A stretch of 64,000 nucleotides of DNA from Calcarisporiella thermophila CBS 279.70 (GCF_041956535.1 NW_027192198.1:1046540-1110539); one strand, 5' to 3'. Shown: positions 1 to 29,961, numbered from the stretch's first letter. Notes: generated by a model not told the origin, from the sequence alone. Numbers and translations: made by a program.

Positions 1-1785
1 CCAAGGAGGAATGGGGATCCCAGAACCATGGACATGGGCCTGCTCAACTCAAGTATGGCACGTCCTCTGCTTACTCAACTCCCAAGACGACGCGGTCCAG
101 CAAACGGCGCGCCGTGAGATCCGAACCCTCGTCCGAAAACGCTACCTTGACAACATCGATGGCATGGGAGATGAAGACCTGATCCCGAAATATTTCAACG
201 GCCAACTGCGTCTCAGGGAACCATATCGCCGGTACATTGACTGCATGGACCCAATGGCACACGCTCCCAAGGCCCTTGCCACAGTAAAGCTTCCGATCAA
301 ATACATCAGAAGCAGCAACACCTTCGACATCGAACTTCCCCTAGATGAGAATGAGGAGAACCGGTACAACACGACGGGATGGAGACGGACCAAAACCATG
401 GTGGCCAGAATCAAACGAGCGTGTGAGGCACGATTTCCCAAACTCTGGACCGAACAGCCCATCCAAGGACGAGCGGTGGCACTCCTGCAAAACCCATGGT
501 CCAACGTGTGGATAAAAAACGACGACCTGTCCACCAGAACCTGGCAATTCGCAGCGAAGGCAAGAACCGACACTCTCCCAACCAACTTCAACCTACACAG
601 ATGGACACGCGGAGAGAAACCAAAGACCTGCAGCTACTGCGGAGTAACGGAAGGGATCCATCACATTCTTACACATTGTCCCCTCAACCGTCAACTCAAA
701 ATCGATCGGCATAACAAGATCGCCCGCAGGCTCGCCCGTGCAGCTCGGTACAACTTCCCGATGGCACAAGTCCTGGAAAACCAAGCCCCTCCAGGCTTAC
801 CCGAGGTTCAACAGCGGCCCGACATCATCATCATCGACGAGAACAGAAAGTCAGTTACTATCATTGATGTCGCAGTGTGCGGGCAAATGGACGCCGACTT
901 CCTCAGCAAAAAACGCAACGAGAAAGTGGAGAAGTACGCCCACATCCGCACCCACTACGAACAACTGGGCTACACCGTCAACCTCGACGCGGCTGTCTTT
1001 GGAGACCTCGGAGGAACGGACGACGCCAATATGAGCATCTTCATGGAGCTTCTTGGAACGCGGGATAGCTATGCCAACCGCATGCACAGGTACATTGTCA
1101 ACGACATTCTACGTATCGGCCACCGCATGTGGGCAGCGCGCTGCTCCCGAATGGCTACTGGACACGGCCCGAGACCCGAAAATCCTGATCACCAGCACTC
1201 TTCGCAACAGCAATCCTCACAACCCCCACAGCCTTCGAATGTGCAAACTGATACAGCAGAATCCCCTTCGGCCCCCCTCGAACCGCCATCGGAGCAATAA
1301 CTCATTATAAATCCTACTCCACCTCAGAGGAGAATCCGACCACTCTTCGACGCGCCATCCCCAGATACCCTCGCAAACCGCATCATACAGGAAGCCTATG
1401 AAACTGCAGTCGCCATCCGAGATACAAATAATCCATACATCAATGAGCTAGATACTATGCCTCCTGAACACGATCCAACATATCCTCCATCGCCATCATG
1501 CCCCGACACGAGTTAAAAAGCTCGCGTTCTCTTTTCTAATTTTCTTTCTATTTCTTTCTATTCCTTTATCCCCTTGTTTTTCTCTTTATGTTTCTTTTTT
1601 TTTTGATGTCTCCTTCTTGCCTTGTCTCGTTTTCTCTTGGTTCCTCTTCTTTTTTTTTCTTTTTTTCTTTTTTATTTTCCCTTTTGGCCCTCAGCTTATT
1701 ATACATCTTATTAGTGTTAGGCATGCAGCACGCAGGAGACGCAGTGGATAACGTCTTAATCTTTAAAGAAAGAATAAAGGAAAAG
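1..1785 (+). mobile_element. 3' portion of a non-LTR retrotransposon with restriction-like endonuclease (NeSL/Utopia/R2-superfamily type), 5' truncated by the window edge
   Basis: Frame is open from base 2 (QGGMGIP, end of the RT/thumb region). It contains W-F--ART-TLP, the CCHC knuckle CSYC..HILTHC, the RHN motif and the PD..D..K RLE motif (RPDIIIID..IIDVAV..EKVEKY). A T-rich 3' UTR and AATAAA at ~1773 follow; the 3' boundary is approximate. Confidence 0.88.
2..1300 (+). CDS. Retrotransposon ORF, C-terminal part (RT thumb, CCHC zinc knuckle, RLE endonuclease)
   Basis: ORF track 11..1300 plus the open upstream frame; motifs as above. Confidence 0.88.
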   Translation, partial: QGGMGIPEPWTWACSTQVWHVLCLLNSQDDAVQQTARREIRTLVRKRYLDNIDGMGDEDLIPKYFNGQLRLREPYRRYIDCMDPMAHAPKALATVKLPIKYIRSSNTFDIELPLDENEENRYNTTGWRRTKTMVARIKRACEARFPKLWTEQPIQGRAVALLQNPWSNVWIKNDDLSTRTWQFAAKARTDTLPTNFNLHRWTRGEKPKTCSYCGVTEGIHHILTHCPLNRQLKIDRHNKIARRLARAARYNFPMAQVLENQAPPGLPEVQQRPDIIIIDENRKSVTIIDVAVCGQMDADFLSKKRNEKVEKYAHIRTHYEQLGYTVNLDAAVFGDLGGTDDANMSIFMELLGTRDSYANRMHRYIVNDILRIGHRMWAARCSRMATGHGPRPENPDHQHSSQQQSSQPPQPSNVQTDTAESPSAPLEPPSEQ

Positions 1786-3033
1786 GGAGCACAGGACACA
1801 CATGTTGTTGGTAGTTTGATAACAACAATTGGCTTGTGGTGGTCTATCATACCAATATTAATTTTCAAGTGTAGTCGGTCTTTACACTAACGTATTAGTA
1901 CGATTCTCTTATCGTTTACTTTTCACCCTTATCACTCCATAAAATTTTATCAATCAATTTTAATAGGGCAATGTTGAAATTGGGTTATTGAAGGAGCAGA
2001 AGTTCCTGAAAAGCTGAATATTGCGGGTAATAACGATAAAGCTTTAAAAATTTATCAACTATATAAGACTCCTACTCATGAGGAGCTGGTTTTGGGACCC
2101 ATTATAACTGAAATGGGATATTAGGAATTAGCGTAAAATAATTTAAATCACTCCACTATTCAATCAGTTTATGAGAGATCTCTTAAAGTTATGTGGAATA
2201 ATGTCTCCAGCATGAACCTAAAGTTTATGAACCTTTAGAGGGCGATTTTGGAGATTATTCCTGCTCCTTTGTCATCATTATCCGCTTGGATGTTCACATA
2301 GAGTCAAACTCGGACAATAATTATATACTTTTTCTTATATCACTTTCCCTATTTTAATCTCTCTCCTTTCCTAATAATCACCCAAGAGGTAAATATTTTA
2401 TGATAGCTCTATCTTATCCTGGGCCCTTATTGAACCTCCTGAGTAAAGAAGTTGAGTGGTCCTCTATCATGTTCTCTCGATATTACTTTTCATTGGAGGA
2501 GAAAAAGGGTATGGTAGCTTCTACGTCAAAAGCACCTGAGTTCTACCCCAGCCTTCCTTTGAAACGAAATTAGAAATATGTTGATGATCGACTATAATAT
2601 TTAGTTAAAAATACATGATATAACAGGTTACCTTACATTCTCATGTCGTTTGATATGAGGAGAGCAAAGGGGTTGAAGGAGAATTACATTTTCTATCGCT
2701 GTAATAGATATTTGGGTTTAGCATTCCGCTGAGACCATCAGTTGATTTTTCCTTGGAGGAACTTTTTGCCTTAGAGATCATTTTTCATGCTGGTCGTTTC
2801 TAGTAAGCTATTTAGTGGAACTGAAACCGAACCTCATTGTTTTCTGGGAGACCAAGAATTCTTGAAGATATACCGTTTTGATTTCGGAACTCTTCTCGGA
2901 CGACACAGTAGATGATAAAAATTCGCTTCTCAAAAATAAATATATACATTATGTATATATATATATATATATATTGAAGCCTTTTAAATTGCAAAGGTGT
3001 AAAATGTTATCTTCAAAAATATTAATGATGTTA

Positions 3034-3105
3034 CTCTCCGGCCGGGAATTGAACCCGGGTCGCCCGCGTGACAGGCGGGAATACTAACCACTATACTACC
3101 GAAGA
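3034..3105 (-). tRNA. tRNA-Asp(GUC)
   Basis: Reverse complement TCTTCGGTAGTATAGTGGTTAGTATTCCCGCCTGTCACGCGGGCGACCCGGGTTCAATTCCCGGCCGGAGAG folds as a cloverleaf with anticodon GTC. Confidence 0.97.
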
Positions 3106-3192
3106 ATTTCAACTATATCTTTTTGGCAGATAATTAATATTTCTTTAAGAAAACTTTAACTGCGCCACTTCTTTTGAATAAATCTTTGTGCT

Positions 3193-3529
3193 GTCTTTGG
3201 ATGGCACATTGGTTAAGAGTCCCGGAACTTAACCATTGTTTGCTGAGTTCGATTCCCGGTGAAGGCACCAGTACTAGAGATGTAGCCGGGACATACTCTA
3301 GGAATTGAGTTATACGCTGCTTCGTTACAACTTCTCTGAAATGCAGTAAAATGTGTCAATGGAATTCTTCCATATATAATTTCAACTTAATCTGTATCTT
3401 TCTCGGTACAAGCAATTCTACTCTACTAGGCTGGTCTGGAGCATTACCTGGGTGATTTTAACGCAGAAGTCTACCCTGCCTTTATTTGTATAGGAGACTT
3501 TTCAATAAAGGTCCTTTGTTAAATAAAAA
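3193..3529 (+). mobile_element. tRNA-derived SINE (copy 1)
   Basis: tRNA-like head 3193-3270 with A box TGGCACATTGG, B box GAGTTCGATTCC and an acceptor stem ending ACCA. 3' stem-loop around AATAAA (3493-3514) and an A-rich tail. 12-bp direct repeat AATAAATCTTTG at 3177-3188 and 3530-3541. Confidence 0.8.
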
Positions 3530-3541
3530 AATAAATCTTTG

Positions 3542-3953
3542 CCAGAAATTGGCTATAACCTGCACAGAGAAATACAACTTTTTGATTCATCTTTACCGAC
3601 TGCCTTCATTAATACGCTTTACAATATTTGGACAATTTAAAATAAAATCTGCAGTTCTTAAAAATCAGTAACAACCTTTTCTTAGTAAATCAGGCAGTAA
3701 AATAGGGCGACTTCCTAACCCTATTACCTTTTCTTATCTTGGATTTGATGACTTCTGCTACCCTTCATCTTATATACTACTACAGATTATTTTTTTTTCC
3801 TTATTTTTTTTTCGAAAAAATATGAAGTGTATTCGCACTCTCATAATATCTCACAGGTTTCACTTGACATTCTTGTCTCCCTTGTTTCGTCCCTTTACTT
3901 CCATTAAATATCGAAAAGGAAGCTTTTTAATAAAGACCCTAAACAAAAAAAAA
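3542..3953 (+). mobile_element. Probable degraded LINE 3' remnant behind SINE copy 1
   Basis: Ends in AATAAAGAC (3929-3937) plus an A-run (3945-3953), the same tail motif as the LINE fragments ending near 17400 and 18690. Coding similarity is weak. Confidence 0.4.
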
Positions 3954-4735
3954 CTTAGGTTTAATGAACTAGTTTTTCTATCAATATTACAGCAACTAGC
4001 AACCATTATCAAATGACTACAAGAATAGGTAGCAAATATCTTCAGAAGAAATCCAAATACAGAGTGCACTAGTAAGTCTGCAACAACCTTCAGGAGTTGA
4101 CATGGGTCCGATAAATATCAAGGATCAAAAAAAATTTGCCACCTGACTGCTATAAATCGCGGGAACTATAAAGTCCAGTTGCTGACCACAAGAAGTCCAA
4201 TTGGCATTATATCTATTAGAAAAACACTAATAATAGCCAAAAATTTCCTCGAACGATAAAAAGTTCCATCTTTAGCTTATTAAAAGAATCTAATGTATCG
4301 ATCTCTTCGCAAAATATCCAGATCAATGCTTAAGGGATGACGCAAGTTCAAACCATCCTTTTCACATCTCTTTCACATATTATCATTCAATGTGGCAGTC
4401 CCTCTTGGGTATGAGAAAGTATGTTCTTTACCTATTTTGGCAATACAATATTTACTACAGGAATAAGCAAATTTTGAACTTGAATTTACTCTACGATATA
4501 ATCCACTGCGATATTTAGAAGAATACATTTTACAGGGTATATAGATTTGTCACAAGATATTTTATTCACTCGTAAGGCAAAAATATTATGATATACATCT
4601 TAATGTAAAAATAGTTAGTATAATAATAATAGTAATAATGATAATAATTAATGACAAATATTTAATAAAGGAAATAATTAAACTACATAAAAGGAGTATA
4701 ATTACTGAAGGGTCATTTTTTCAGTGCCTCTAAAA

Positions 4736-14289: not shown

Positions 14290-16040
14290 GATGGCTATGC
14301 TTGAATTAAGGGCCCACTATTTGAAAGTGTTAGCGCTAACAGGAATAGGCAGGGAGGACGGAGACACTACAGAAATGAGGGGAATGGATAGGCAGTTGAA
14401 GATGGAGCTGTAAAAGACTCAAACAAGGAGAAATAAAGGAAGGGAATGGGAAGGGGGTGGTAATAGAACGAATGACACTTGGATATTAGAGGTGCTACAG
14501 TTGGTTCAAAGACTCACTCTCACTAAAGATAGAAATGAACACACTTGAATGAGTTCAACGGGGATGTAGAACGACCATTCAAGATGGAATGAGATTCAGA
14601 GATGGTCGTCTCTTTCCAACTTCTTCTTTGAAAGAGGAAAAGGGGAGAGGGAGGGGATGGATATCGTCTTATTTCGTATCGCACAGAAGGGAAAGCATTA
14701 TTAGGCATATGTAACGCTAGCTCATAACGTGCGGTGCACGGATATTGCTTATGTTTCAATCTTATCCCTATTTAAGACAATAGGGGATGCGAACGTGTGC
14801 GACGTTGGCCTCAAGGGACGGAAGTGAGCACAGGCCATTTAATTCTATGAAATTCATTCCCAAAACACCGATTGCCGGAGTACAAAACGTCTTCTCTAAA
14901 TTAAAAGCAACAGTATAAAAATAAATGATTGTGCTGACAGTTCGATCTCAAAGCGCCAATAATGGTGCGCTAAGCTCCCTTAAAGTCTCAGGCAACTCTT
15001 GTAAAGCAAATTAAGAAGCATCGCAATAAAGAGAATACACCTAATTATAAGATAACCGGGAATAATTCGGTCTTTAAAGGCCGAAAATTACTATGAAAAT
15101 AAGAGAACTGAAACAAAATAATTCTATTAAAAAATAAACTAGCTATTAAAAAAGCAAAGGGAACGCTCAATCGCAGAATGCTGAGCGTTTTTTTTTTCTC
15201 ACAATCATATTGAGCTTCAACTAAAGAAACACTAGTAAAATCAATTAAACCCGACTTGACTACAGATGAGAAGATCCTAGATAAACCTCTGGTATAAAAC
15301 CAGTTTTATAATATAACCAAGCATCAACTAATGCTACACAAGGGTGCGAGAGGCGACTTGTGCCTTTTTCTTAATATGAATTCAGAGCAATGAGGCTAGC
15401 ACACTGCCGCAATCGCTGTAGCAGAGATAGTGATGCTTAAATTTATTTGACATTTTTATATGTCAGAAGAGCAATCAAATCGTTTTATAAACGCCCGTTG
15501 TAGTGGAGTCACAATCGCGGTTAATCCCTTTTCTATATCGGTGGTCAGCATCGCCCTTTCTCTCAAGTGAAAAAGAAAAAGCGTGTTCCTTGAGGAGAGA
15601 TTTTGAAAAATTCGTATTTTCTCAACCTATTATTTTTATTGAAATATAAAAGAGACTGGCATTGCTCGGTATCCTATTACTAATATATATACCACGGCGA
15701 CGCGATTATAGTAAAACAGAGCCTGGGCTTGTATGCACTGCAGTTTGTAATACGAGCGCATGATGCATTTTCGTTCTCTCTCTGTATCACATTCTACAAA
15801 AGTGGATAGAAAATTGATAGGAAGAAACCCCATTTTTTACGATTCTAGGTAATACAACTAATAGATGAGTGCAATGGTCTTCATACAGTAATATAAATGG
15901 AAATTACGCAAATGGAGAATAGGGCTGTGTTTGTTTAAGGATAAAATAATAAGATTTTCTTTAGAGATATCCATTTTTCTTGTTCTCAGTAGTAGTGTGG
16001 ATTGGGCTGAGAATCATTTTAGCAAAAAACAAAATTGAAT

Positions 16041-16113
16041 CGCCCAACGTGGGGGTCGAACCCACAACCTTGAGATTAAGAGTCTCACGCTCTACCGATT
16101 GAGCTAGCCGGGC
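16041..16113 (-). tRNA. tRNA-Lys(CUU)
   Basis: Reverse complement GCCCGGCTAGCTCAATCGGTAGAGCGTGAGACTCTTAATCTCAAGGTTGTGGGTTCGACCCCCACGTTGGGCG. Confidence 0.97.
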
Positions 16114-16193
16114 TTCCGCTGAAAGAGAGTTCAAAAAGCCAAATTTGAATAACATAGAATCGTTTTGGATTTTTGCATTTTGCCGCCCTTGGT

Positions 16194-16527
16194 GGGGGAG
16201 GGTTAGTGTAGTGGACTATTCCTGGGATGCCGATGAGAACGGCGTGGGTTCGAATCCCACTTCCCCCACCAGCACTTACTCTTAGTTTGTGACTGCTGTC
16301 CACTTGATCAGAAGCTGAGTCTTGATTATTGAAAAGACCGCCCTTACGATAAGTACAAAAGATTACATCGGTTTCACGTACATGCTATACACGACAACTG
16401 CGATATACGCATATCGATTGAACGTCTATCGATCAAGGACCTATATCTCGTTAAGTCCATTGACATTAACTTCATGTAATATATGGAAATTAAATAAAAG
16501 TTTCCATTGATTGATCAAAAAAAAAAA
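16194..16527 (+). mobile_element. tRNA-derived SINE (copy 2)
   Basis: Head 16194-16271: GGGGGAG/TTCCCCC acceptor stem plus ACCA, A box TAGTGTAGTGG, B box GGTTCGAATCC. 3' hairpin ATGGAAA..AATAAA..TTTCCAT and poly(A). 16-bp TSD TTTGCCGCCCTTGGTG at 16179-16194 and 16528-16543. Confidence 0.9.
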
Positions 16528-16539
16528 TTTGCCGCCCTT

Positions 16540-17409
16540 GGTGCCTCGATTCTGGCCCGAGGTTGGATCTACACCAAAAGATTGGGAGAAGGTTTGGACC
16601 TCCGTCCACAAGCGACCCACACTCCCTAAAACACCGTGCGCTACGCTGGTGGATCCTTGTAGAACGAGTAATCGCTAACTCTACATTTCCTGGTCACGAT
16701 CCAAAGTGTACCCGTTGCAACGCTTCAAGGGTCACAATTCGTCATACCTTTTTCGAATGTCCGGAACCTACACCAGTGTGGTAGTGGGCGGAGAAGTGTA
16801 TCATCACCATCACAGGTCCCCCAGAATTCTCAGGTGCTGATTGCTCGCAACCTTATATTAGGAGACCTATCTGGATCCTCACGAACAGCAAGACACGTGG
16901 CTCAAATCACCTTCGATTCGGTACTGTGGCAAATCCATCGGGATCGTATCGCCTTTCATTTTGAAAACACTCGAGCCTTATCCGAAACCATTATCAATCG
17001 GGCCAAGATGGATATTGAGGAGGCAATAGGAGCCGAACTAACAAGAGCCCGAATAAAGCGACAAATTGAACAGTTCCGAAGCAGGTGGTATATACTGGCC
17101 GCAGTGAAAGAAGGAGCTAATAGAGCGGCTCTAGAACTGGACTGACGCAGTAGCCCCTACTACTAGCCCTTCTCTTTCCTCATATCTCTCTCTCCATATC
17201 ACCTATCAAGTCTTCCCCTAATACCCACAGTTAGCTGAGTTTTATTTCTCATCTACCCATCTGAGGAGAAAATTCGTTATGACCAATTTACCCCGAATTG
17301 CAATACCGCATTAATATCTAGCTCTCATTTTATTACTTTTAATAATGTAACGATTGTACTTTAGAGTCTTCTTAAACAATAAAGACTCATTTTTGATAAA
17401 AAAAAAAAA
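16540..17409 (+). mobile_element. 5'-truncated L1/Tx1-like LINE (3' end of ORF2 plus 3' UTR)
   Basis: zf-RVT-type CxxC..H..C motif (CTRCNASRVTIRHTFFECP) with stop and frameshift. 3' hairpin GAGTCTT..AATAAAGACTC and poly(A). TSD GCATTTTGCCGCCCTT (16175-16190) vs GCTTTTTGCCGCCCTT (17410-17425). Confidence 0.85.
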
Positions 17410-17425
17410 GCTTTTTGCCGCCCTT

Positions 17426-17872
17426 TTCGTAATAGTTTAAATAAACCACTGGATGCAAGTGCTTGGTCCTTTGAGGAAAAAAGCCGCCCTATTCGTCCAA
17501 GCCAAGGATTGTATTTATCACAGATAACCATGAACATGAAGATATTGCATTCAACTGTATCTCTTATCCGATTTACACATTGCCATCAAGGCTCAATAGC
17601 TACAGGCACAGAGGAAAGAATTTAAACTAAGGTTCGAGCAGAAATAGAAAAAGAACTCACCAATCCAGATCGATGAGAGCCGAGAGGTAGGCTTCTATTT
17701 CGAGGGAGTAAATAACACTTGGTTTGAACTTTACAAGCACGGGTCTCACCAGGCTATATCCCTTGATTTCTTGTACTATAAAATCTTGCTTGGAAGCCCC
17801 CTTCACTTATATAATATATTTTAAAATAAACCATAGTGTGCAAGTTTTCGCGTCCTAAAAGGAAAAAAAAAA
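17426..17872 (+). mobile_element. Possible older LINE 3' remnant
   Basis: KVRAEIEKELT resembles MDIEEAIGAELT of the adjacent copy, and the segment ends in an A-run. Confidence 0.35.
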
Positions 17873-17979
17873 GGCACTCGTTTCGTCCAGAAATGGCCAA
17901 CTCTTCCAAGGCATTACGCGCTACATTGACGAATCCATAATGCACGTGTGATCACCAACCTGACCTACCCTGATTGAGC

Positions 17980-18692
17980 CCCGAAGTGTGTACCCTCTGC
18001 AGCGCTTCGAAAGACACAACCCGTTACATTTATTCGAATGTCCTGAAGTAACGCCAATGTGCCAGTGGGCACAGAGATATATCAACATCATTGTATGTCC
18101 CCCAGAACACTCTGGTATCTACTTCTAAGTTTCTAACACTTGGCGTCTTACCCGAAGCCCCAAGTATGCTAAACCATGTGGTTCAAATTACTTTCGATTC
18201 AGCATTGTGGCAGATACACCTGGGCCGCATTGTTTACCACTCGAGTATCATCCGAGACTCTCACCAACCGTGTCAAATTTGGTATCGAGGAACCAAATTG
18301 GTAAAAAGCGCGAAAAGTGCGAGGGCTCGAGCTGTTTCGGGGCAGGTTGTGCAAACAAGATGTGTAGATAGAAGGAGTAGATAGTGCGGCCCCGGTGTTG
18401 AAATGGCGTAGTGGTCACTTCTTATTATTTTCTACCTTTCATAACTCCATGTCTTTTGTTTTCTATCTACTTGACCAATCTTCTAATTACTACTGTCAAA
18501 TTATTTCTTTTGTTTCCATTTTTCATTAGTTATTACTTGAGAAATACAAATTGTTATTTCCAATGTTTTATCTTGAATAGATTTGGCAAATTAACTTTTT
18601 CTTTTCTTTCTATTTTCCCATCATCCTGTAGCCACTGTATTTTATTAGGAATCTCTCTAGTAATAAAGACGCACAATAGCAAAAAAAAAAAA
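17980..18692 (+). mobile_element. Second, more degraded L1/Tx1-like LINE 3' fragment
   Basis: Homologous to 16700-17145 (TTCGAATGTCC; HVVQITFDSALWQIH vs HVAQITFDSVLWQIH). T-rich UTR, AATAAAGAC and poly(A) at 18682-18692. Confidence 0.75.
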
Positions 18693-20218
18693 GCTATCGG
18701 TTGCACTTTATAGATAAGTTTCCCTCTATTGTCTTCCTTCTTTACTAAGATCATCTTTTTTTGTTTTTCTTTCCTTTTGCTTACTACTACCATGGTCATT
18801 AGGTATTGAAAAGAGGACTTTAAGAAAATCCTCTCTTTGTTGTAAAAAATAAAGCCGCCCATTATGGATCTCTCATTCAAAAGGAACAAACAAATATTCT
18901 ATCCTATTTTAATAAAAAAAAAGAAAGCTTTCGACCGCCACTGCTCGAGCGTCATTTGAGAATCTCATCAACCTTGTCAAATCTGATATTAAGACGGCCA
19001 TATAAGGTTATCCTTTTCTTCTGTTTATTTTTTTTTTTATCAGGAGCCGATATGATTTGAGTTCATATACTTATGAATTAAAAACTTGGCTGAAAGTTTA
19101 CGTTGGCTGAGATGAATCTCTTTGTCACCTTAGCTATCCCAAAGCTGGATCAAATGTGAGCAAATTTGATCTTAAGCGCTACGTACTTCTCTAGGTCTAT
19201 AGAATACTTTACAATAAAATACTTGCATTTAAATAACAAGCACTTTATTTTCATTAGCCATTCAATAATTTTATATCCTGTTTTATTTCAAAAAGAAAAA
19301 TAAAAATCGTGCCCTGCAACATAGGGCTGCAATAAAACAGAAAATCAGATACAAAAGTAACTGTACGATACGTGCCAAGCATCCCACTCACCTAGGAAAA
19401 AAAAGCCTCCACTCAATGAAATATCCCAAGGCCTTCTTGGCCATTAGTCCGTTCTTGGCGTACCCTAAGTTCCATGGCGCTATCCACTCGATATAATGCA
19501 CAAAGCTTTGTGGGACTGTTTTCTTGCAACCGATAGCCTTCAAGCTAGCGGGAATTTATGTTGACGGTTCAAAGGATCCACTCCGGCTGCACCAGTTCAT
19601 ACTACGAGGAAAGAAGGCTTAACTCTGTTACATACTAGGAAATTTTATGCTACTGTTTCTTTTCATGTTTCTTTTAATAGCCTGCAGATGGCGGCTTCGT
19701 TTCTTTGTTGATAGCCTTCTGTCTCCGCTACACATCACTGTTTTCGCTTCACCTTGATTGACATTGGTATTGGCCTCTAATTATAGTTTGATAGCGAAAT
19801 GGCTTCATGGGGGAGCATCGGTTCAATTATCCGAGGCAAGCACCAACTCATTGTTTCCACCTAATTATCGACGGGGCGCCATTTTTTGGGTGACACTAGG
19901 CCACCGATCAGGGTAGGCCAGGGCTAGCCAGGGCAGCAATCCTTTCACTAGCTCCACATTATAATTTATTGCATTAAAGGCGGATGAATAGCCCGCAGGA
20001 GATAGAGCACAGTGACTTGGGGGAGGGGGGAGCCCTTCCATCTCCATATAGTGAGTATACCATAGAACGAGGGCAGACAAATTTGAATGGAATTGGCGAG
20101 GGACAGACGAGAATCGGTTGCCACCGCTTCTGACGTCACACCATAGGACAATGATATGGAAATTTTAGCCCGACCCCCACGCAACACTCCTCCTTCGTAA
20201 GATTCTCGACCTCGAGCC

Positions 20219-28143: not shown

Positions 28144-28215
28144 GGGCTCAACTGGGAATTGAACCCAGGACCTCTCCCACCCTAAGGGAGAATTATACCA
28201 CTAAACCATTGAGCC
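28144..28215 (-). tRNA. tRNA-Pro(AGG)
   Basis: Reverse complement GGCTCAATGGTTTAGTGGTATAATTCTCCCTTAGGGTGGGAGAGGTCCTGGGTTCAATTCCCAGTTGAGCCC. Confidence 0.95.
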
Positions 28216-29961
28216 ACCCTATTCGGTGAAATTTAGATTTGAGAAATCTTTTTATAGCGGAATTTTTCTGTATAATTTTCACAGATGGATTTTTTTAAAG
28301 AGACATTCTCAGGAAGGTTAGTGTTCATAGTTTAGGCCTTTTTTGAAATATACAAGGTTCGATAACCTTTGTAAGAGACTTAATACATTTTATCAGAGAA
28401 TCCTGGATACACTACGTTTATATTTCTAGGGATAATATCAACGCATTGGATGCCACGAGGAGACGCAAGGCAAAGACCGACAAAAGCATGATGGTATTAT
28501 ATCCAAAGGTATATTTCCGTTTGATCTACATATAAATCAATGGGCCATGAGTAGAGGTCCAAAGGAAAAAAAATGAAGAAGAAAGCTTAAAAATAAAAAT
28601 GGGTCAAGAGCCGACAAATTCAGATCATCGATAGTCAGGAGGTGACCTTTGATTTCGAAGACGTAGGGTATACCTAGAGCGACCTAATCTGTTTTGAGTC
28701 GTTTCAACCTTTATACTTCGATTACTTATATTTAATTTCTCTAAGTTGACCCCACTGTTATAATAAATTTTAAATTAACAGAGCACGTAAGTACTTGCCT
28801 CCAGAAAGGAAAAAAAAACCATTAAAATAAAAGTGATTTTTTATTTTACTTTCCCGTTTTCCTACAGCTGCTTTACTTTCAGCCTCATATACATATATAT
28901 ATATCTATTTACTATGTTTTTTTTTTTACACCATCACATTTCTCTTTAATCCATCTATGAATAGCCGCATTGAAAGTGACTTTATCATCCTATCCTAATG
29001 TACCTTCAATTTTTCGACACCTATCCTACCTTTTTCAACCTAGCCCTCATACCATCAGGAGTAGATATCTCCCAGCGTGAGCGGGGGCCTAACTGTCTGC
29101 CATTGAACTGGCGTTCAGTGGCCCATTTCTTTGATTACCCAGCCTCTAGAGGCAAGGGAGATTGCTTGTCATTTGTATTTAATTTTTACTTAAAAATGGA
29201 ATAATGAAGCGACCGATTTCTCTCCGTCCATGGCCCAAGCCCCCTCCCAGTTCCCCAATGAATGCAGCCTTCTGCTGAATTTCAATGCATCCCAGTAGGA
29301 ACGCGCATGTAACCAGATCCAAGTGCGTCCATATATTCTATTCAAGGCTTGAGTTGATGAAGTTAAATGAAAGTAAACCTTCTCACTATGACTATATATA
29401 GCAGTGTCGGGATGGTCAGATATCAAGATCGCCAGGGACGCTTCCTCAGAAATCCGATGTCTCCTTCTCATCAAGTAACGAAAATGGACGCTTGCCTCGG
29501 GGCAATACCGAATTCCAAATTCCAGAAGGAGAGAGAAGCAGGATCTTTTGGGAACAGAATATACCATTTGCTTATTTACCAGCATTGATTGCCTTGCTAA
29601 AAAGGCAGTCATCGCCCCTTTGTTGAAAAGAACAGAATGAGGGTCAAGCCTGTCCAGAATCCGCCGATGGGAGTGGCCGACTCAACCAGTAGGTCGGGTC
29701 TATTATGGGCTCAGGCCGACAGGGGGCAGGCTGACTCTCAGTAGGTTTTTCGTTAATGCGTCCATCCAAGTTGACAGCTGCGTTGTAGAAATTGTATATA
29801 TATTCTTTTTAACTTACAGAGGAGGAAAAGCAAAATGTAAATAAATTGTATAGCACCATGGATTAGTAGTAAACAGAAGAGGGGAAGATTTTTTCATATA
29901 TGGAAAATGCATCAACCCAAGGGCAAAGAGTCGGGCTCGTGGCTCTAGGAACTCTGGTCCA

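What the first reader, a model, noticed from the sequence alone, without database searches (positions are those of the whole stretch)
16041..18940. Position-specific retroposon 'landing pad' upstream of tRNA-Lys: nested LINE and SINE insertions at the same site (TRE5-like system in a fungus)
Seen in sequence: 62-81 bp upstream of the tRNA 5' end (16113), a 16-bp TSD (16175-16190 / 17410-17425, one mismatch) brackets a 5'-truncated L1/Tx1-like LINE. A second 16-bp TSD (16179-16194 / 16528-16543) brackets a SINE and includes the first 4 nt (GGTG) of the LINE, so the SINE arrived later and was nicked only 4 bp away. Older LINE tails follow in the same orientation (poly(A) ends at ~17872, 18692, possibly ~18925) and look more degraded with distance. 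All elements face the tRNA head-to-head. Established: Dictyostelium TRE5 (L1 clade) inserts upstream of tRNA genes in this orientation through TFIIIB contact, whereas the well-known fungal tRNA-targeting elements (Ty1, Ty3) are LTR elements. Inference: this is a Pol III-tethered non-LTR integration system that repeatedly pushes older copies outward. I do not know of one described in fungi.
Basis: partly seen in the sequence, partly recalled or inferred. Interest (0 to 1): 0.9.

Follow-up and report, generated by a model that had tools for sequence, protein, structure and literature searches.

The report
Fungal retroposons that target tRNA genes
In the thermophilic fungus Calcarisporiella thermophila, L1-like jumping genes (LINEs) and the short SINEs they carry along land repeatedly at one spot about 60-85 bases in front of tRNA genes (and one 5S rRNA gene), always pointing away from the gene; this habit has so far been described only for TRE5-type elements of social amoebae.

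Summary
tRNA-Lys(CTT) (16041-16113, minus strand) is followed upstream by a stack of at least five, probably seven, poly(A) retroelements, all head-to-head with the tRNA. The innermost is a tRNA-derived SINE with a perfect 16-bp TSD. The next is a 5'-truncated L1-like LINE whose TSD lies 4 nt away. Degraded copies of the same target sequence recur between the outer elements.

Genome-wide (G000 = C. thermophila), 19 of 35 SINE copies lie 77-98 nt (median 84) from tRNA genes with 17 anticodons (12 amino acids), all head-to-head. TSDs are about 16 bp and differ at every locus, so GCCGCCC is only this site's duplicated target, not a motif. Two young LINE copies with open ORF2 lie about 75-77 nt from tRNA-Gln and tRNA-Ser. 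One 5S rRNA gene carries two insertions at -56/-76 where its paralogue is empty.

The ORF2 N-terminus is collinear with human L1 ORF2p. Tethering to the Pol III initiation complex (TFIIIB) is inferred, not tested. Accessible literature lists such non-LTR elements only in dictyostelids.

I rate this a new member of a known kind, and the first fungal case I could find. First readers of this scan noted the same pattern in other windows of this genome.

The parts
16024..16036 (-). T-runs (T4, T6 on the tRNA strand) just after the tRNA 3' end; likely Pol III terminator
   Evidence: sequence reading
16041..16113 (-). tRNA-Lys(CTT) gene, the Pol III gene that defines the landing site
   Evidence: ARAGORN; Rfam RF00005 66.4 bits
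16114..16174 (.). native 61-nt spacer between the tRNA 5' end and the first nick site
   Evidence: it has no similarity to other tRNA upstream blocks
16175..16194 (+). tRNA-proximal copy of the target site (LINE TSD 16175-16190, SINE TSD 16179-16194)
16195..16527 (+). SINE1: tRNA-derived head (A and B boxes, ...CCACCA), 3' hairpin holding AATAAA, A11 tail; the youngest insertion
   Evidence: (tRNA-clan match 16194-16271, E 3e-5)
16528..16543 (+). distal copy of the SINE TSD (16/16); its last 4 nt belong to the LINE
   Evidence: for the LINE-internal ggtgcctc
16540..17409 (+). LINE-A: 5'-truncated L1-like element with the ORF2 C-terminus (frameshifted, CX2CX8HX4C knuckle), a ~250-nt 3' UTR, a hairpin plus AATAAA, and poly(A)
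17410..17425 (+). distal copy of the LINE-A TSD (15/16)
17432..17483 (+). 52-nt, extremely 5'-truncated tail of the family-B repeat, flanked by gccgccctNttcgt copies (17418-17431 / 17484-17497)
   Evidence: sequence reading
17498..17872 (+). family-B ~375-nt poly(A) repeat unit (old; genomic copies 71-75% identical, most starting at base 3)
17890..18692 (+). older, degraded LINE 3' fragment with an A12 tail
18693..18853 (+). remnant ending in a hairpin plus an A-rich tail, followed by gccgccca (another copy of the target)
   Evidence: sequence reading; weak
18868..18922 (+). short A-tailed remnant (weak call)
   Evidence: sequence reading
18923..18945 (+). outermost, degraded copy of the original target (gctttcgaccgccac versus gcattttgccgccct); the end of the stack
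   Evidence: sequence reading
3033..3106 (-). tRNA-Asp(GTC), the second landing site in the window
3189..3529 (+). SINE2 (a second tRNA-derived SINE family) with its 5' end 83 nt from tRNA-Asp; TSD aataaatctttg at 3177-3188 / 3530-3541
28144..28215 (-). tRNA-Pro(AGG), the third tRNA gene of the window
28487..28818 (+). old family-B copy (60% identity) upstream of tRNA-Pro, in the same head-to-head orientation

Best explanation
The region is a landing site for a set of L1-superfamily LINE families and the non-autonomous, tRNA-derived SINEs they mobilise in trans, in the fungus Calcarisporiella thermophila.

Shown: integration is by target-primed reverse transcription. The strand carrying the tRNA sense sequence is nicked about 59-79 nt (median 67) upstream of the mature tRNA 5' end. 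The second nick falls about 16 nt further out. The element therefore ends up with its 5' end 77-98 nt from the gene, its poly(A) tail pointing away, and a ~16-bp TSD. Because the site is set by distance to the gene and not by sequence, each new insertion re-uses the gene-proximal TSD copy and shifts older elements outward. This builds an age-ordered stack (16175-18945 here).

Inferred: the ruler is anchored on the Pol III initiation complex at the transcription start, most likely TFIIIB, which an element-encoded protein (ORF1p or ORF2p) contacts. Three observations point that way. tRNA genes of all kinds are hit. Class II tRNAs with long variable arms show the same distance. A 5S rRNA gene is hit about 11 nt closer to its 5' end, as expected if distance is counted from the transcription start.

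SINE and LINE RNAs share a 3' hairpin holding AAUAAA, followed by poly(A). This probably lets the LINE reverse transcriptase pick up SINE RNA.
For: Window anatomy and TSDs.

SINE1 genome-wide:
- 19 of 35 non-duplicate copies lie 77-98 nt (median 84) from a tRNA, and all 19 are head-to-head.
- The targeted tRNAs carry 17 different anticodons for 12 amino acids (Lys, Pro, Gln, Leu, His, Arg, Ala, Thr, Cys, Ser, Asn and more).
- TSDs have a median of 16 bp and a different sequence at each locus. P < 1e-59 against uniform insertion.
- 5 of the 16 other copies cannot be assessed because of contig ends or withheld N exactly where the tRNA would start. Several more sit behind another element.

SINE2: distances of 83, 74 and 90 nt from tRNA-Asp, -Lys and -Thr, and 83 nt at two further loci by coordinates.

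LINEs:
- The window copy has its TSD start at 62 nt.
- The C3 copy has a 1372-aa open ORF2, a 17-bp TSD (TGCTGACCCCGTCGAAA) and its 5' end 77 nt from tRNA-Gln.
- The C9 copy is 99% identical over the 83 aligned ORF1 residues, has a 1346-aa open frame and lies about 75 nt from tRNA-Ser.
- In L028, two LINE fragments are stacked on the same 17/18-bp TSD before tRNA-Lys.
- Whenever a tRNA lies on the 5' side of a LINE fragment within 1.5 kb, the orientation is head-to-head (8 of 8).

5S rRNA: two A-tailed fragments with a 20-bp TSD lie at -56/-76 of one 5S gene, and the neighbouring paralogue has the empty site.

L1 nature: Exo_endo_phos plus the start of RVT_1; collinear match to human L1 ORF2p residues 7-572, E 4e-53; ORF1 with an RRM-like region and a CCHC knuckle aligned to ORF1 of distant relatives.

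Shared 3' hairpin.

Youth: SINE1 copies are 95-99% identical to their majority sequence.
Against: - The tether itself was not tested. No binding or structural data were obtained.
- Only one 5S locus is informative, and the single U6 gene has no insertion.
- At least two SINE1 copies (L036, L054) have no detectable Pol III gene upstream, even though L054 has a clean TSD. Off-target integration therefore exists.
- The loci are the best-scoring matches of capped searches (40 candidates scored per search), not a census. Only 63 tRNA genes were listed genome-wide.
- The RT core of every LINE reads N (withheld). ORF2 intactness and RT identity therefore rest on the search tool's own frame reports.
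- The hairpin z-scores are modest (-0.7 to -3.9).
Confidence: 0.85

Rival explanations
1. Targeting is real, but the anchor is not TFIIIB. The element may read another feature that sits at a fixed place upstream of active Pol III genes: a Pol III subunit (as Ty1 integrase does), TFIIIC, or the edge of the first upstream nucleosome.
For: Nothing here separates TFIIIB from other parts of the initiation complex. The nick zone (-59 to -79) lies beyond the usual TFIIIB footprint, about where a positioned nucleosome could begin (general knowledge). Ty1 uses Pol III subunits (review PMC5911963).
Against: The tRNA distance (67 nt from the mature end) and the 5S distance (56 nt) line up if counted from the transcription start. 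Class II tRNAs keep the same distance. Both observations argue against a box-B or TFIIIC ruler, but not against Pol III subunits or a nucleosome edge.
Confidence: 0.3
2. The endonuclease recognises a DNA motif (GCCGCCC or similar), and tRNA genes merely carry it.
For: GCCGCCC follows several poly(A) ends in the window.
Against: The TSDs of 26 SINE1 copies and of the LINE copies differ at every locus and show no shared motif. The repeated GCCGCCC is the duplicated target of this one site.
Confidence: 0.02
3. Insertion is random, and only copies in harmless places near tRNA genes survive selection.
For: The genome is compact (28 Mb), so selection against genic insertions must be strong.
Against: Selection cannot produce a 22-nt window, a single orientation (19/19) and re-use of the same nucleotide positions within 1-4 nt.
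Confidence: 0.03
4. The association arose by duplication of tRNA-plus-SINE modules, or the elements target the ~414-bp TGTTG...CAACA repeat that often sits before tRNA genes rather than the gene itself.
For: Many tRNA genes share upstream blocks, and some SINE1 copies lie inside that repeat (L033, L045).
Against: The flanks and TSDs differ between loci, and the tRNAs involved differ in species. At least 8 SINE1-bearing tRNA genes have unique spacers without the repeat yet show the same distance. The 5S site has no such repeat.
Confidence: 0.03

Closest known systems
TRE5 (TRE5-A/B/C), Dictyostelium discoideum
   Same: Both are L1-type non-LTR elements with APE, RT and a zinc knuckle. Both insert upstream of tRNA genes in the opposite transcriptional orientation. 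Both also hit a 5S gene about 10 nt closer than tRNA genes: TRE5 at 44-54 versus 37-41 bp (PMC5911963), here 67 versus 56. Both give TSDs and many 5'-truncated copies.
   Different: The host is a fungus rather than an amoebozoan. The site lies further out (nick ~67, element end ~84 nt). Abundant tRNA-derived SINE partners use the same site. No A/B/C-module UTRs were seen, and one copy has its ATG 7 nt from the junction. Kinship with TRE5 was not tested. The nearest database relatives are only 30-34% identical.
NLTR-B (Polysphondylium pallidum) and NLTR-A (D. purpureum)
   Same: Both are L1-type elements inserting upstream of tRNA genes. NLTR-B inserts at 39-64 bp, which overlaps the nick zone found here.
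   Different: They are dictyostelid elements. NLTR-A inserts at 2-6 bp. No SINE partners are described in the review.
Ty3 (S. cerevisiae), Tj1 (S. japonicus), Tyl6/Ylt1 (Yarrowia)
   Same: These are fungal retroelements tethered to the Pol III machinery at tRNA genes.
   Different: They are LTR elements that use an integrase, insert at or a few bp from the transcription start, and for Ty3 go in both orientations. The ~414-bp TGTTG...CAACA repeat seen here at -8 to -15 resembles that class. The LINE/SINE system does not.
Ty1/Ty2/Ty4
   Same: They prefer sites upstream of Pol III genes.
   Different: They use a wide (~1 kb), nucleosome-periodic window, an integrase that binds Pol III subunits, and no fixed orientation.
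Sequence-specific L1/Tx1- and R-type elements (Tx1, R1, R2, Zorro3)
   Same: They are non-LTR elements with restricted targets. Zorro3 and Ylli show that L1-type LINEs exist in fungi.
   Different: Those elements read a DNA sequence: a repeat, an rDNA site, or poly(A) for Zorro3. Here the target sequence is free and the position is fixed.
Human L1 with Alu; stringent LINE-SINE pairs
   Same: A poly(A)-tailed, Pol III-type SINE is mobilised in trans by an L1-type ORF2p. The ORF2 N-terminus is collinear with human ORF2p. LINE and SINE share a 3' stem-loop.
   Different: Human L1 has only a loose TTTT/AA preference and no gene-relative targeting.

Membership tests
L1 superfamily of non-LTR retrotransposons | N-terminal apurinic-type endonuclease in ORF2 | tested here: met
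   PF03372 E 1.8e-8 at residues 29-252 of L063:193-2019:-. L1 EN structures match at E ~1e-9.
L1 superfamily of non-LTR retrotransposons | Reverse transcriptase following the EN, collinear with L1 ORF2p | tested here: met
   Query residues 25-603 match human ORF2p residues 7-572, E 4e-53. RVT_1 and Exo_endo_phos hits lie in one 1372-aa open frame on C3. The RT core itself reads N and was not inspected.
L1 superfamily of non-LTR retrotransposons | C-terminal CCHC (zf-RVT type) motif in ORF2 | tested here: met
   CTRCNASRVTIRHTFFEC appears in the translation of 16545 onward. PF13966 was found in the distant relatives and, just under the cut-off, in the window fragment 2-1297.
L1 superfamily of non-LTR retrotransposons | poly(A) 3' end, variable 5' truncation, TSD of about 7-20 bp | tested here: met
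Tx1 group (sequence-specific L1 relatives) | Insertion at one defined DNA sequence | tested here: not met
   Target sequences differ at every locus. No phylogeny was made.
TRE5 family (dictyostelids) | Insertion upstream of tRNA genes, in the opposite orientation | tested here: met
   19/19 SINE1 copies and 8/8 LINE fragments are head-to-head.
TRE5 family (dictyostelids) | Distance of about 44-54 bp from the mature tRNA coding sequence | tested here: not met
   The TSD starts at 59-79 nt (median 67) and the element 5' end lies at 77-98 nt.
TRE5 family (dictyostelids) | Also targets 5S rRNA genes | tested here: met
   One 5S gene has two insertions and a paralogous empty site. This is a single locus.
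TRE5 family (dictyostelids) | ORF1 protein binds TFIIIB (TBP, Brf1, Bdp1) | not testable with these tools
No complex job was run.
TRE5 family (dictyostelids) | Common descent with TRE5 in an RT/APE phylogeny | not tested
   No TRE5 sequence was reachable and the RT core is withheld. The nearest relatives are 30-34% identical, unnamed metagenome contigs.
tRNA-derived SINE | Pol III internal promoter (A and B boxes) in a tRNA-like head | tested here: met
   TAGTGTAGTGG and GGTTCGAATCC are read in 16195-16270. A tRNA-clan match covers 16194-16271, E 3e-5. ARAGORN calls the head a tRNA in some loci.
tRNA-derived SINE | No coding capacity, many copies with a discrete 5' end, TSDs, and a LINE-like 3' end | tested here: met
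   186 first-look candidates, with copies spanning bases 1-333. TSDs. Shared 3' hairpin and tail.

The most novel reading that the evidence does not exclude
A whole set of retroelements in an early-diverging fungus has evolved, independently of the amoebal TREs, a ruler on the Pol III initiation complex. It comprises several L1-like LINE families diverged to about 54% protein identity and at least two SINE families. The fixed head-to-head orientation would then be functional: full-length elements carry almost no 5' UTR (ATG 7 nt from the junction in one copy), so they may depend on the nucleosome-free, divergently transcribed region upstream of the tRNA gene as their Pol II promoter. Together with the TGTTG...CAACA repeat at -8 to -15, this would reproduce in a fungus the two-tier occupation of tRNA genes known from Dictyostelium.
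Probability: 0.25. Interest if true: 0.8.

Novelty: new member of a known kind. Interest (0 to 1): 0.66.

Why it matters
Position-specific integration next to Pol III genes by non-LTR elements has been known only from dictyostelid amoebae. The 2018 review of the field lists no other case, and four further literature searches found no fungal one.

A second, phylogenetically remote instance allows a direct test of whether the same solution, contact with TFIIIB, evolved twice.

It also shows that the targeting information acts in trans. SINEs that encode nothing land at the same nucleotides as the LINEs.

The host is a thermophile, so its L1-type ORF1p and ORF2p and its TFIIIB may be stable enough for structural work on a targeted TPRT complex. 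That bears on how retroelements can be steered to harmless genomic sites.

Tried and rejected
- The RT cores of all LINE copies, and some tRNA positions, read N (withheld). I did not try to obtain them by other means. RT presence rests.
- The first long locus (L061) held no usable LINE ORFs.
- The nearest non-self relatives (P0003, P0004, P0007) sit on ~5-kb metagenome contigs without tRNA genes, so they say nothing about targeting elsewhere. Twenty top hits carry no useful names.
- The protein atlas gave only generic EN/RT clusters.
- No Pol III gene other than tRNA was found by Rfam near the SINE1 copies that lack a tRNA.
- The single U6 gene shows no insertion.
- For sequencing runs, none was listed, so no read-level evidence of expression was obtained and read laying was not used.
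- Complex prediction was not run, because the partner proteins were unavailable and the interface is unknown. Structure prediction was not run, because the readable ORF1 is 5'-truncated.
- The TGGCGCAG/GTGACTG upstream 'motifs' were first taken for promoter elements. At least the CTGCGCCA and CGACGCAACA blocks turned out to be the two ends of one repeat.
- In one search a majority sequence of the non-coding SINE1 was computed inside the script, only to measure divergence. It was neither printed nor used further.
Full report
**1. What is in the window**

ARAGORN finds tRNA-Lys(CTT) at 16041-16113 on the minus strand (Rfam 66.4 bits). Its upstream side is therefore at higher coordinates. The elements, reading outward from the gene:
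- A unique 61-nt spacer.
- The sequence gcattttgccgcccttggtg at 16175-16194.
- A 333-nt element (16195-16527) with a tRNA-like head (A box TAGTGTAGTGG, B box GGTTCGAATCC, ...CCACCA) and an A11 tail.
- An exact repeat of tttgccgcccttggtg at 16528-16543.
- An 870-nt LINE 3' fragment ending in poly(A) at 17409.
- The sequence gctttttgccgccctt at 17410-17425, a 15/16 match to 16175-16190.

The final ggtg of the SINE's duplication is LINE sequence, because other copies read ggtgcctc... internally. The SINE therefore entered after the LINE, with nicks displaced by 4 nt.

Further out lie five more elements, all on the plus strand:
- A 52-nt tail (17432-17483).
- A ~375-nt repeat unit (17498-17872).
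- A diverged LINE fragment (17890-18692).
- Two weaker A-tailed remnants (to 18853 and to 18922).

Increasingly degraded copies of the same target (gccgccct...) lie between them. A last copy at about 18923-18945 is followed by unique sequence. The stack holds at least five and probably seven insertions.

**2. The organism**

The best protein matches to the LINE are named Calcarisporiella thermophila. One of them lies on a contig of 1,376,677 bases, the length of contig C3 of G000. The host is thus an early-diverging, thermophilic fungus with a 28.2-Mb assembly.

**3. Is the position specific? (SINE1)**

A search of the genome with SINE1 gave 186 first-look candidates. Thirty loci with 1.5-kb flanks were read.
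- Of 35 non-duplicate full-length copies, 19 have a tRNA gene 77-98 nt (median 84) before the SINE 5' end. All 19 are head-to-head, and the tRNAs carry 17 different anticodons for 12 amino acids.
- TSDs are 13-19 bp (median 16). They place the gene-proximal nick 59-79 nt (median 67) from the mature tRNA 5' end.
- The duplicated sequences have nothing in common. GCCGCCC is simply the target of this one site, copied at each insertion.
- Under uniform insertion the result has P < 1e-59, and 19/19 for orientation has P = 2e-6.
- Of the 16 remaining copies, three lie at contig ends. Two have a withheld N-run beginning exactly where the tRNA would start (L045 at 83 nt; L051). Several lie behind another element of a stack. 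At least two (L036, L054) have no recognisable Pol III gene.
- All three tRNA genes of the window carry upstream poly(A) elements in the same orientation. tRNA-Asp has a second SINE family (SINE2) at 83 nt with a 12-bp TSD. tRNA-Pro has an old family-B copy.

**4. The LINEs**

The window fragment has 49 or more genomic matches at 70-92% identity, belonging to several subfamilies.
- On contig C3 a related copy has a 1372-aa open ORF2 frame holding both Exo_endo_phos and RVT_1 matches.
- Its readable N-terminal 609 residues match Pfam EN and the start of RT. They align collinearly with human L1 ORF2p residues 7-572 (E 4e-53).
- ORF1 has an RRM-like region and one CCHC knuckle. It aligns with the 379-404-aa ORF1 of distant relatives.
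- This copy is flanked by a 17-bp TSD, and its 5' end lies 77 nt from tRNA-Gln(TTG), head-to-head.
- A copy on C9 is 99% identical over the 83 aligned ORF1 residues and is reported with a 1346-aa open frame. It ends about 75 nt from tRNA-Ser(CGA).
- A copy on C51 (1678-aa open frame reported) has its ATG 7 nt from the junction with a tRNA-upstream block. The tRNA itself reads N.
- In L028, two LINE fragments share the same 17/18-bp TSD before another tRNA-Lys, the same stacking as in the window.
- In every case where a tRNA lies within 1.5 kb of the 5' side of a LINE fragment, the two are head-to-head (8 of 8).
- The RT cores read N in all fetched loci. I did not try to recover them.

**5. Mechanism**

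With the poly(A) end distal and the TSD as found, target-primed reverse transcription must start from a nick at the gene-proximal edge of the TSD, on the strand that carries the tRNA sense sequence. The second nick lies about 16 nt further out. This follows from the established TPRT model.

Because SINEs encode nothing yet land on the same nucleotides as the LINEs, site choice must be imposed in trans by LINE proteins.

Three observations point to an anchor at the transcription start rather than at the internal promoter:
- Any tRNA species serves as a target.
- Leu and Ser genes, whose box B lies about 10 nt further in, show the same or larger distances (83-98 nt).
- One 5S rRNA gene carries two A-tailed fragments with a 20-bp TSD at -56/-76, while the adjacent paralogue has the empty site. 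The 11-nt difference from tRNA genes is about the length of a tRNA 5' leader. TRE5 shows the same offset between tRNA genes (44-54 bp) and 5S genes (37-41 bp).

TFIIIB is the factor common to both promoter types at a fixed place before the start site, so it is the likeliest anchor. This is inference. A Pol III subunit or the edge of an upstream nucleosome is not excluded.

LINE and SINE 3' ends align. They fold into a 7-9-bp hairpin that holds AAUAAA, followed by about 10 nt and poly(A). The stem sequences differ between LINE, SINE1 and SINE2. This fits recognition of a shared 3' structure, but the statistics are modest.

**6. Comparison with what is known**

The 2018 review of Pol III-directed retrotransposition lists non-LTR elements only from dictyostelids (TRE5, TRE3, NLTR-A, NLTR-B), and for fungi only LTR elements. 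Four further searches found no fungal case (Calcarisporiella plus retrotransposon, tRNA gene plus non-LTR plus Mucoromycota, TRE5 plus fungi, L1-like plus tRNA gene plus fungal genome). A fifth, broader search returned 713 papers, and the 15 listed held none. The Yarrowia LINE Ylli and the Candida element Zorro3 are described with other or no target preference.

The system works like TRE5: L1-type, upstream, opposite orientation, and 5S also hit. It differs in distance, host kingdom, the presence of SINE partners and the lack of TRE5-style UTR modules. Descent from a common ancestor with TRE5 was not tested. The nearest database relatives are only 30-34% identical and unnamed. I therefore file it as a new member of the known kind 'Pol III gene-targeted non-LTR retrotransposon', not as a member of the TRE5 family.

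**7. A second tier of insertions**

While checking whether shared upstream sequence could explain the targeting, I found that many tRNA genes of different specificity share blocks beginning 8-15 nt before the mature 5' end.
- The blocks are the two ends of one ~414-bp repeat (a short form is ~118 bp) with termini TGTTG...CAACA and 4-bp TSDs. It is present in either orientation, and at least seven copies are 97-100% identical.
- It may be a solo LTR of a Ty3-like element that targets the start site, or a non-autonomous element. No copy pair flanking an internal region was seen.
- SINE1 has inserted inside it at two loci.
- At least eight targeted tRNA genes lack it and keep the same SINE distance. 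LINE/SINE targeting therefore does not depend on it.

**8. Limits**

The searches are capped and list only the best candidates, so the numbers are samples and not a census. No RNA or DNA sequencing run was listed. No binding test was possible. Earlier first-stage notes of this scan describe the same pattern in this and other windows of the genome. They were not used as evidence.

Noticed in passing
L012:3000-3413; L026:928-1342; L033:1429-1895; L045:1144-1908; L061:4192-4606: A ~414-bp repeat (short form ~118 bp) with termini TGTTG...CAACA and 4-bp TSDs sits with one end 8-15 nt before the mature 5' end of tRNA genes of seven kinds, in either orientation. At least 7 copies are 97-100% identical. 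It could be a solo LTR of a Ty3-like start-site-targeting element or a non-autonomous element; this is unresolved.
   Followed up: partly
tRNA upstream regions in L005, L013, L039, L041, L043, L047, L048, L061 and window 3107-3189: There are further shared upstream blocks: TGGCGCAGTTATGACTG at about -55, and GTGACTG...CCGTACCAAAAACCAAT..TCTCGTAACA ending about -10 to -20. They may be the ends of a second repeat family (TGTTAC...GTAACA) or real promoter elements.
   Followed up: partly
window 2-1297 (+): An open 432-aa stretch that runs in from the window's left edge is the C-terminal part of another LINE ORF2 (GGMGIP motif; zf-RVT 26.4 bits, just under the 27.5 cut-off). It lies downstream of tRNA-Asp, tail-to-tail. 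Its own target lies outside the window.
   Followed up: no
window 3542-4135: Beyond SINE2 there are further A-tailed remnants (A-runs near 3947-3955 and 4128-4135). They suggest a second stack upstream of tRNA-Asp.
   Followed up: no
L087:1432-1614: A weak 5S-like match (47.8 bits) has a SINE1 head ending only 10 nt before it. This does not fit the usual spacing, and the rest of the locus reads N.
   Followed up: no
L054:1935-2010: About 100 nt before an 'orphan' SINE1 copy lies a tRNA-like or SINE-like A-box sequence (ggttaagtctagtggac). It may be a Pol III unit that ARAGORN and Rfam do not call.
   Followed up: no
L038:1862-1990: The end of the TGTTG...CAACA repeat is present, but no tRNA follows where one is expected. 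The tRNA gene may have been lost or replaced.
   Followed up: no
G000 C9:763758-764006 and C51:24393-24812: The genome search reports open frames of 1346 and 1678 aa around ORF1 matches, so ORF1 may run into ORF2 in these copies. In the C3 copy the two ORFs are in different frames, about 170 nt apart.
   Followed up: no
many loci (for example L045:1922-3338, L068:1370-1478, L051:27-1468): Withheld N-runs cover the LINE RT cores and, in places, begin exactly where a tRNA gene is expected. Counts of tRNA-adjacent copies are therefore lower bounds.
   Followed up: partly
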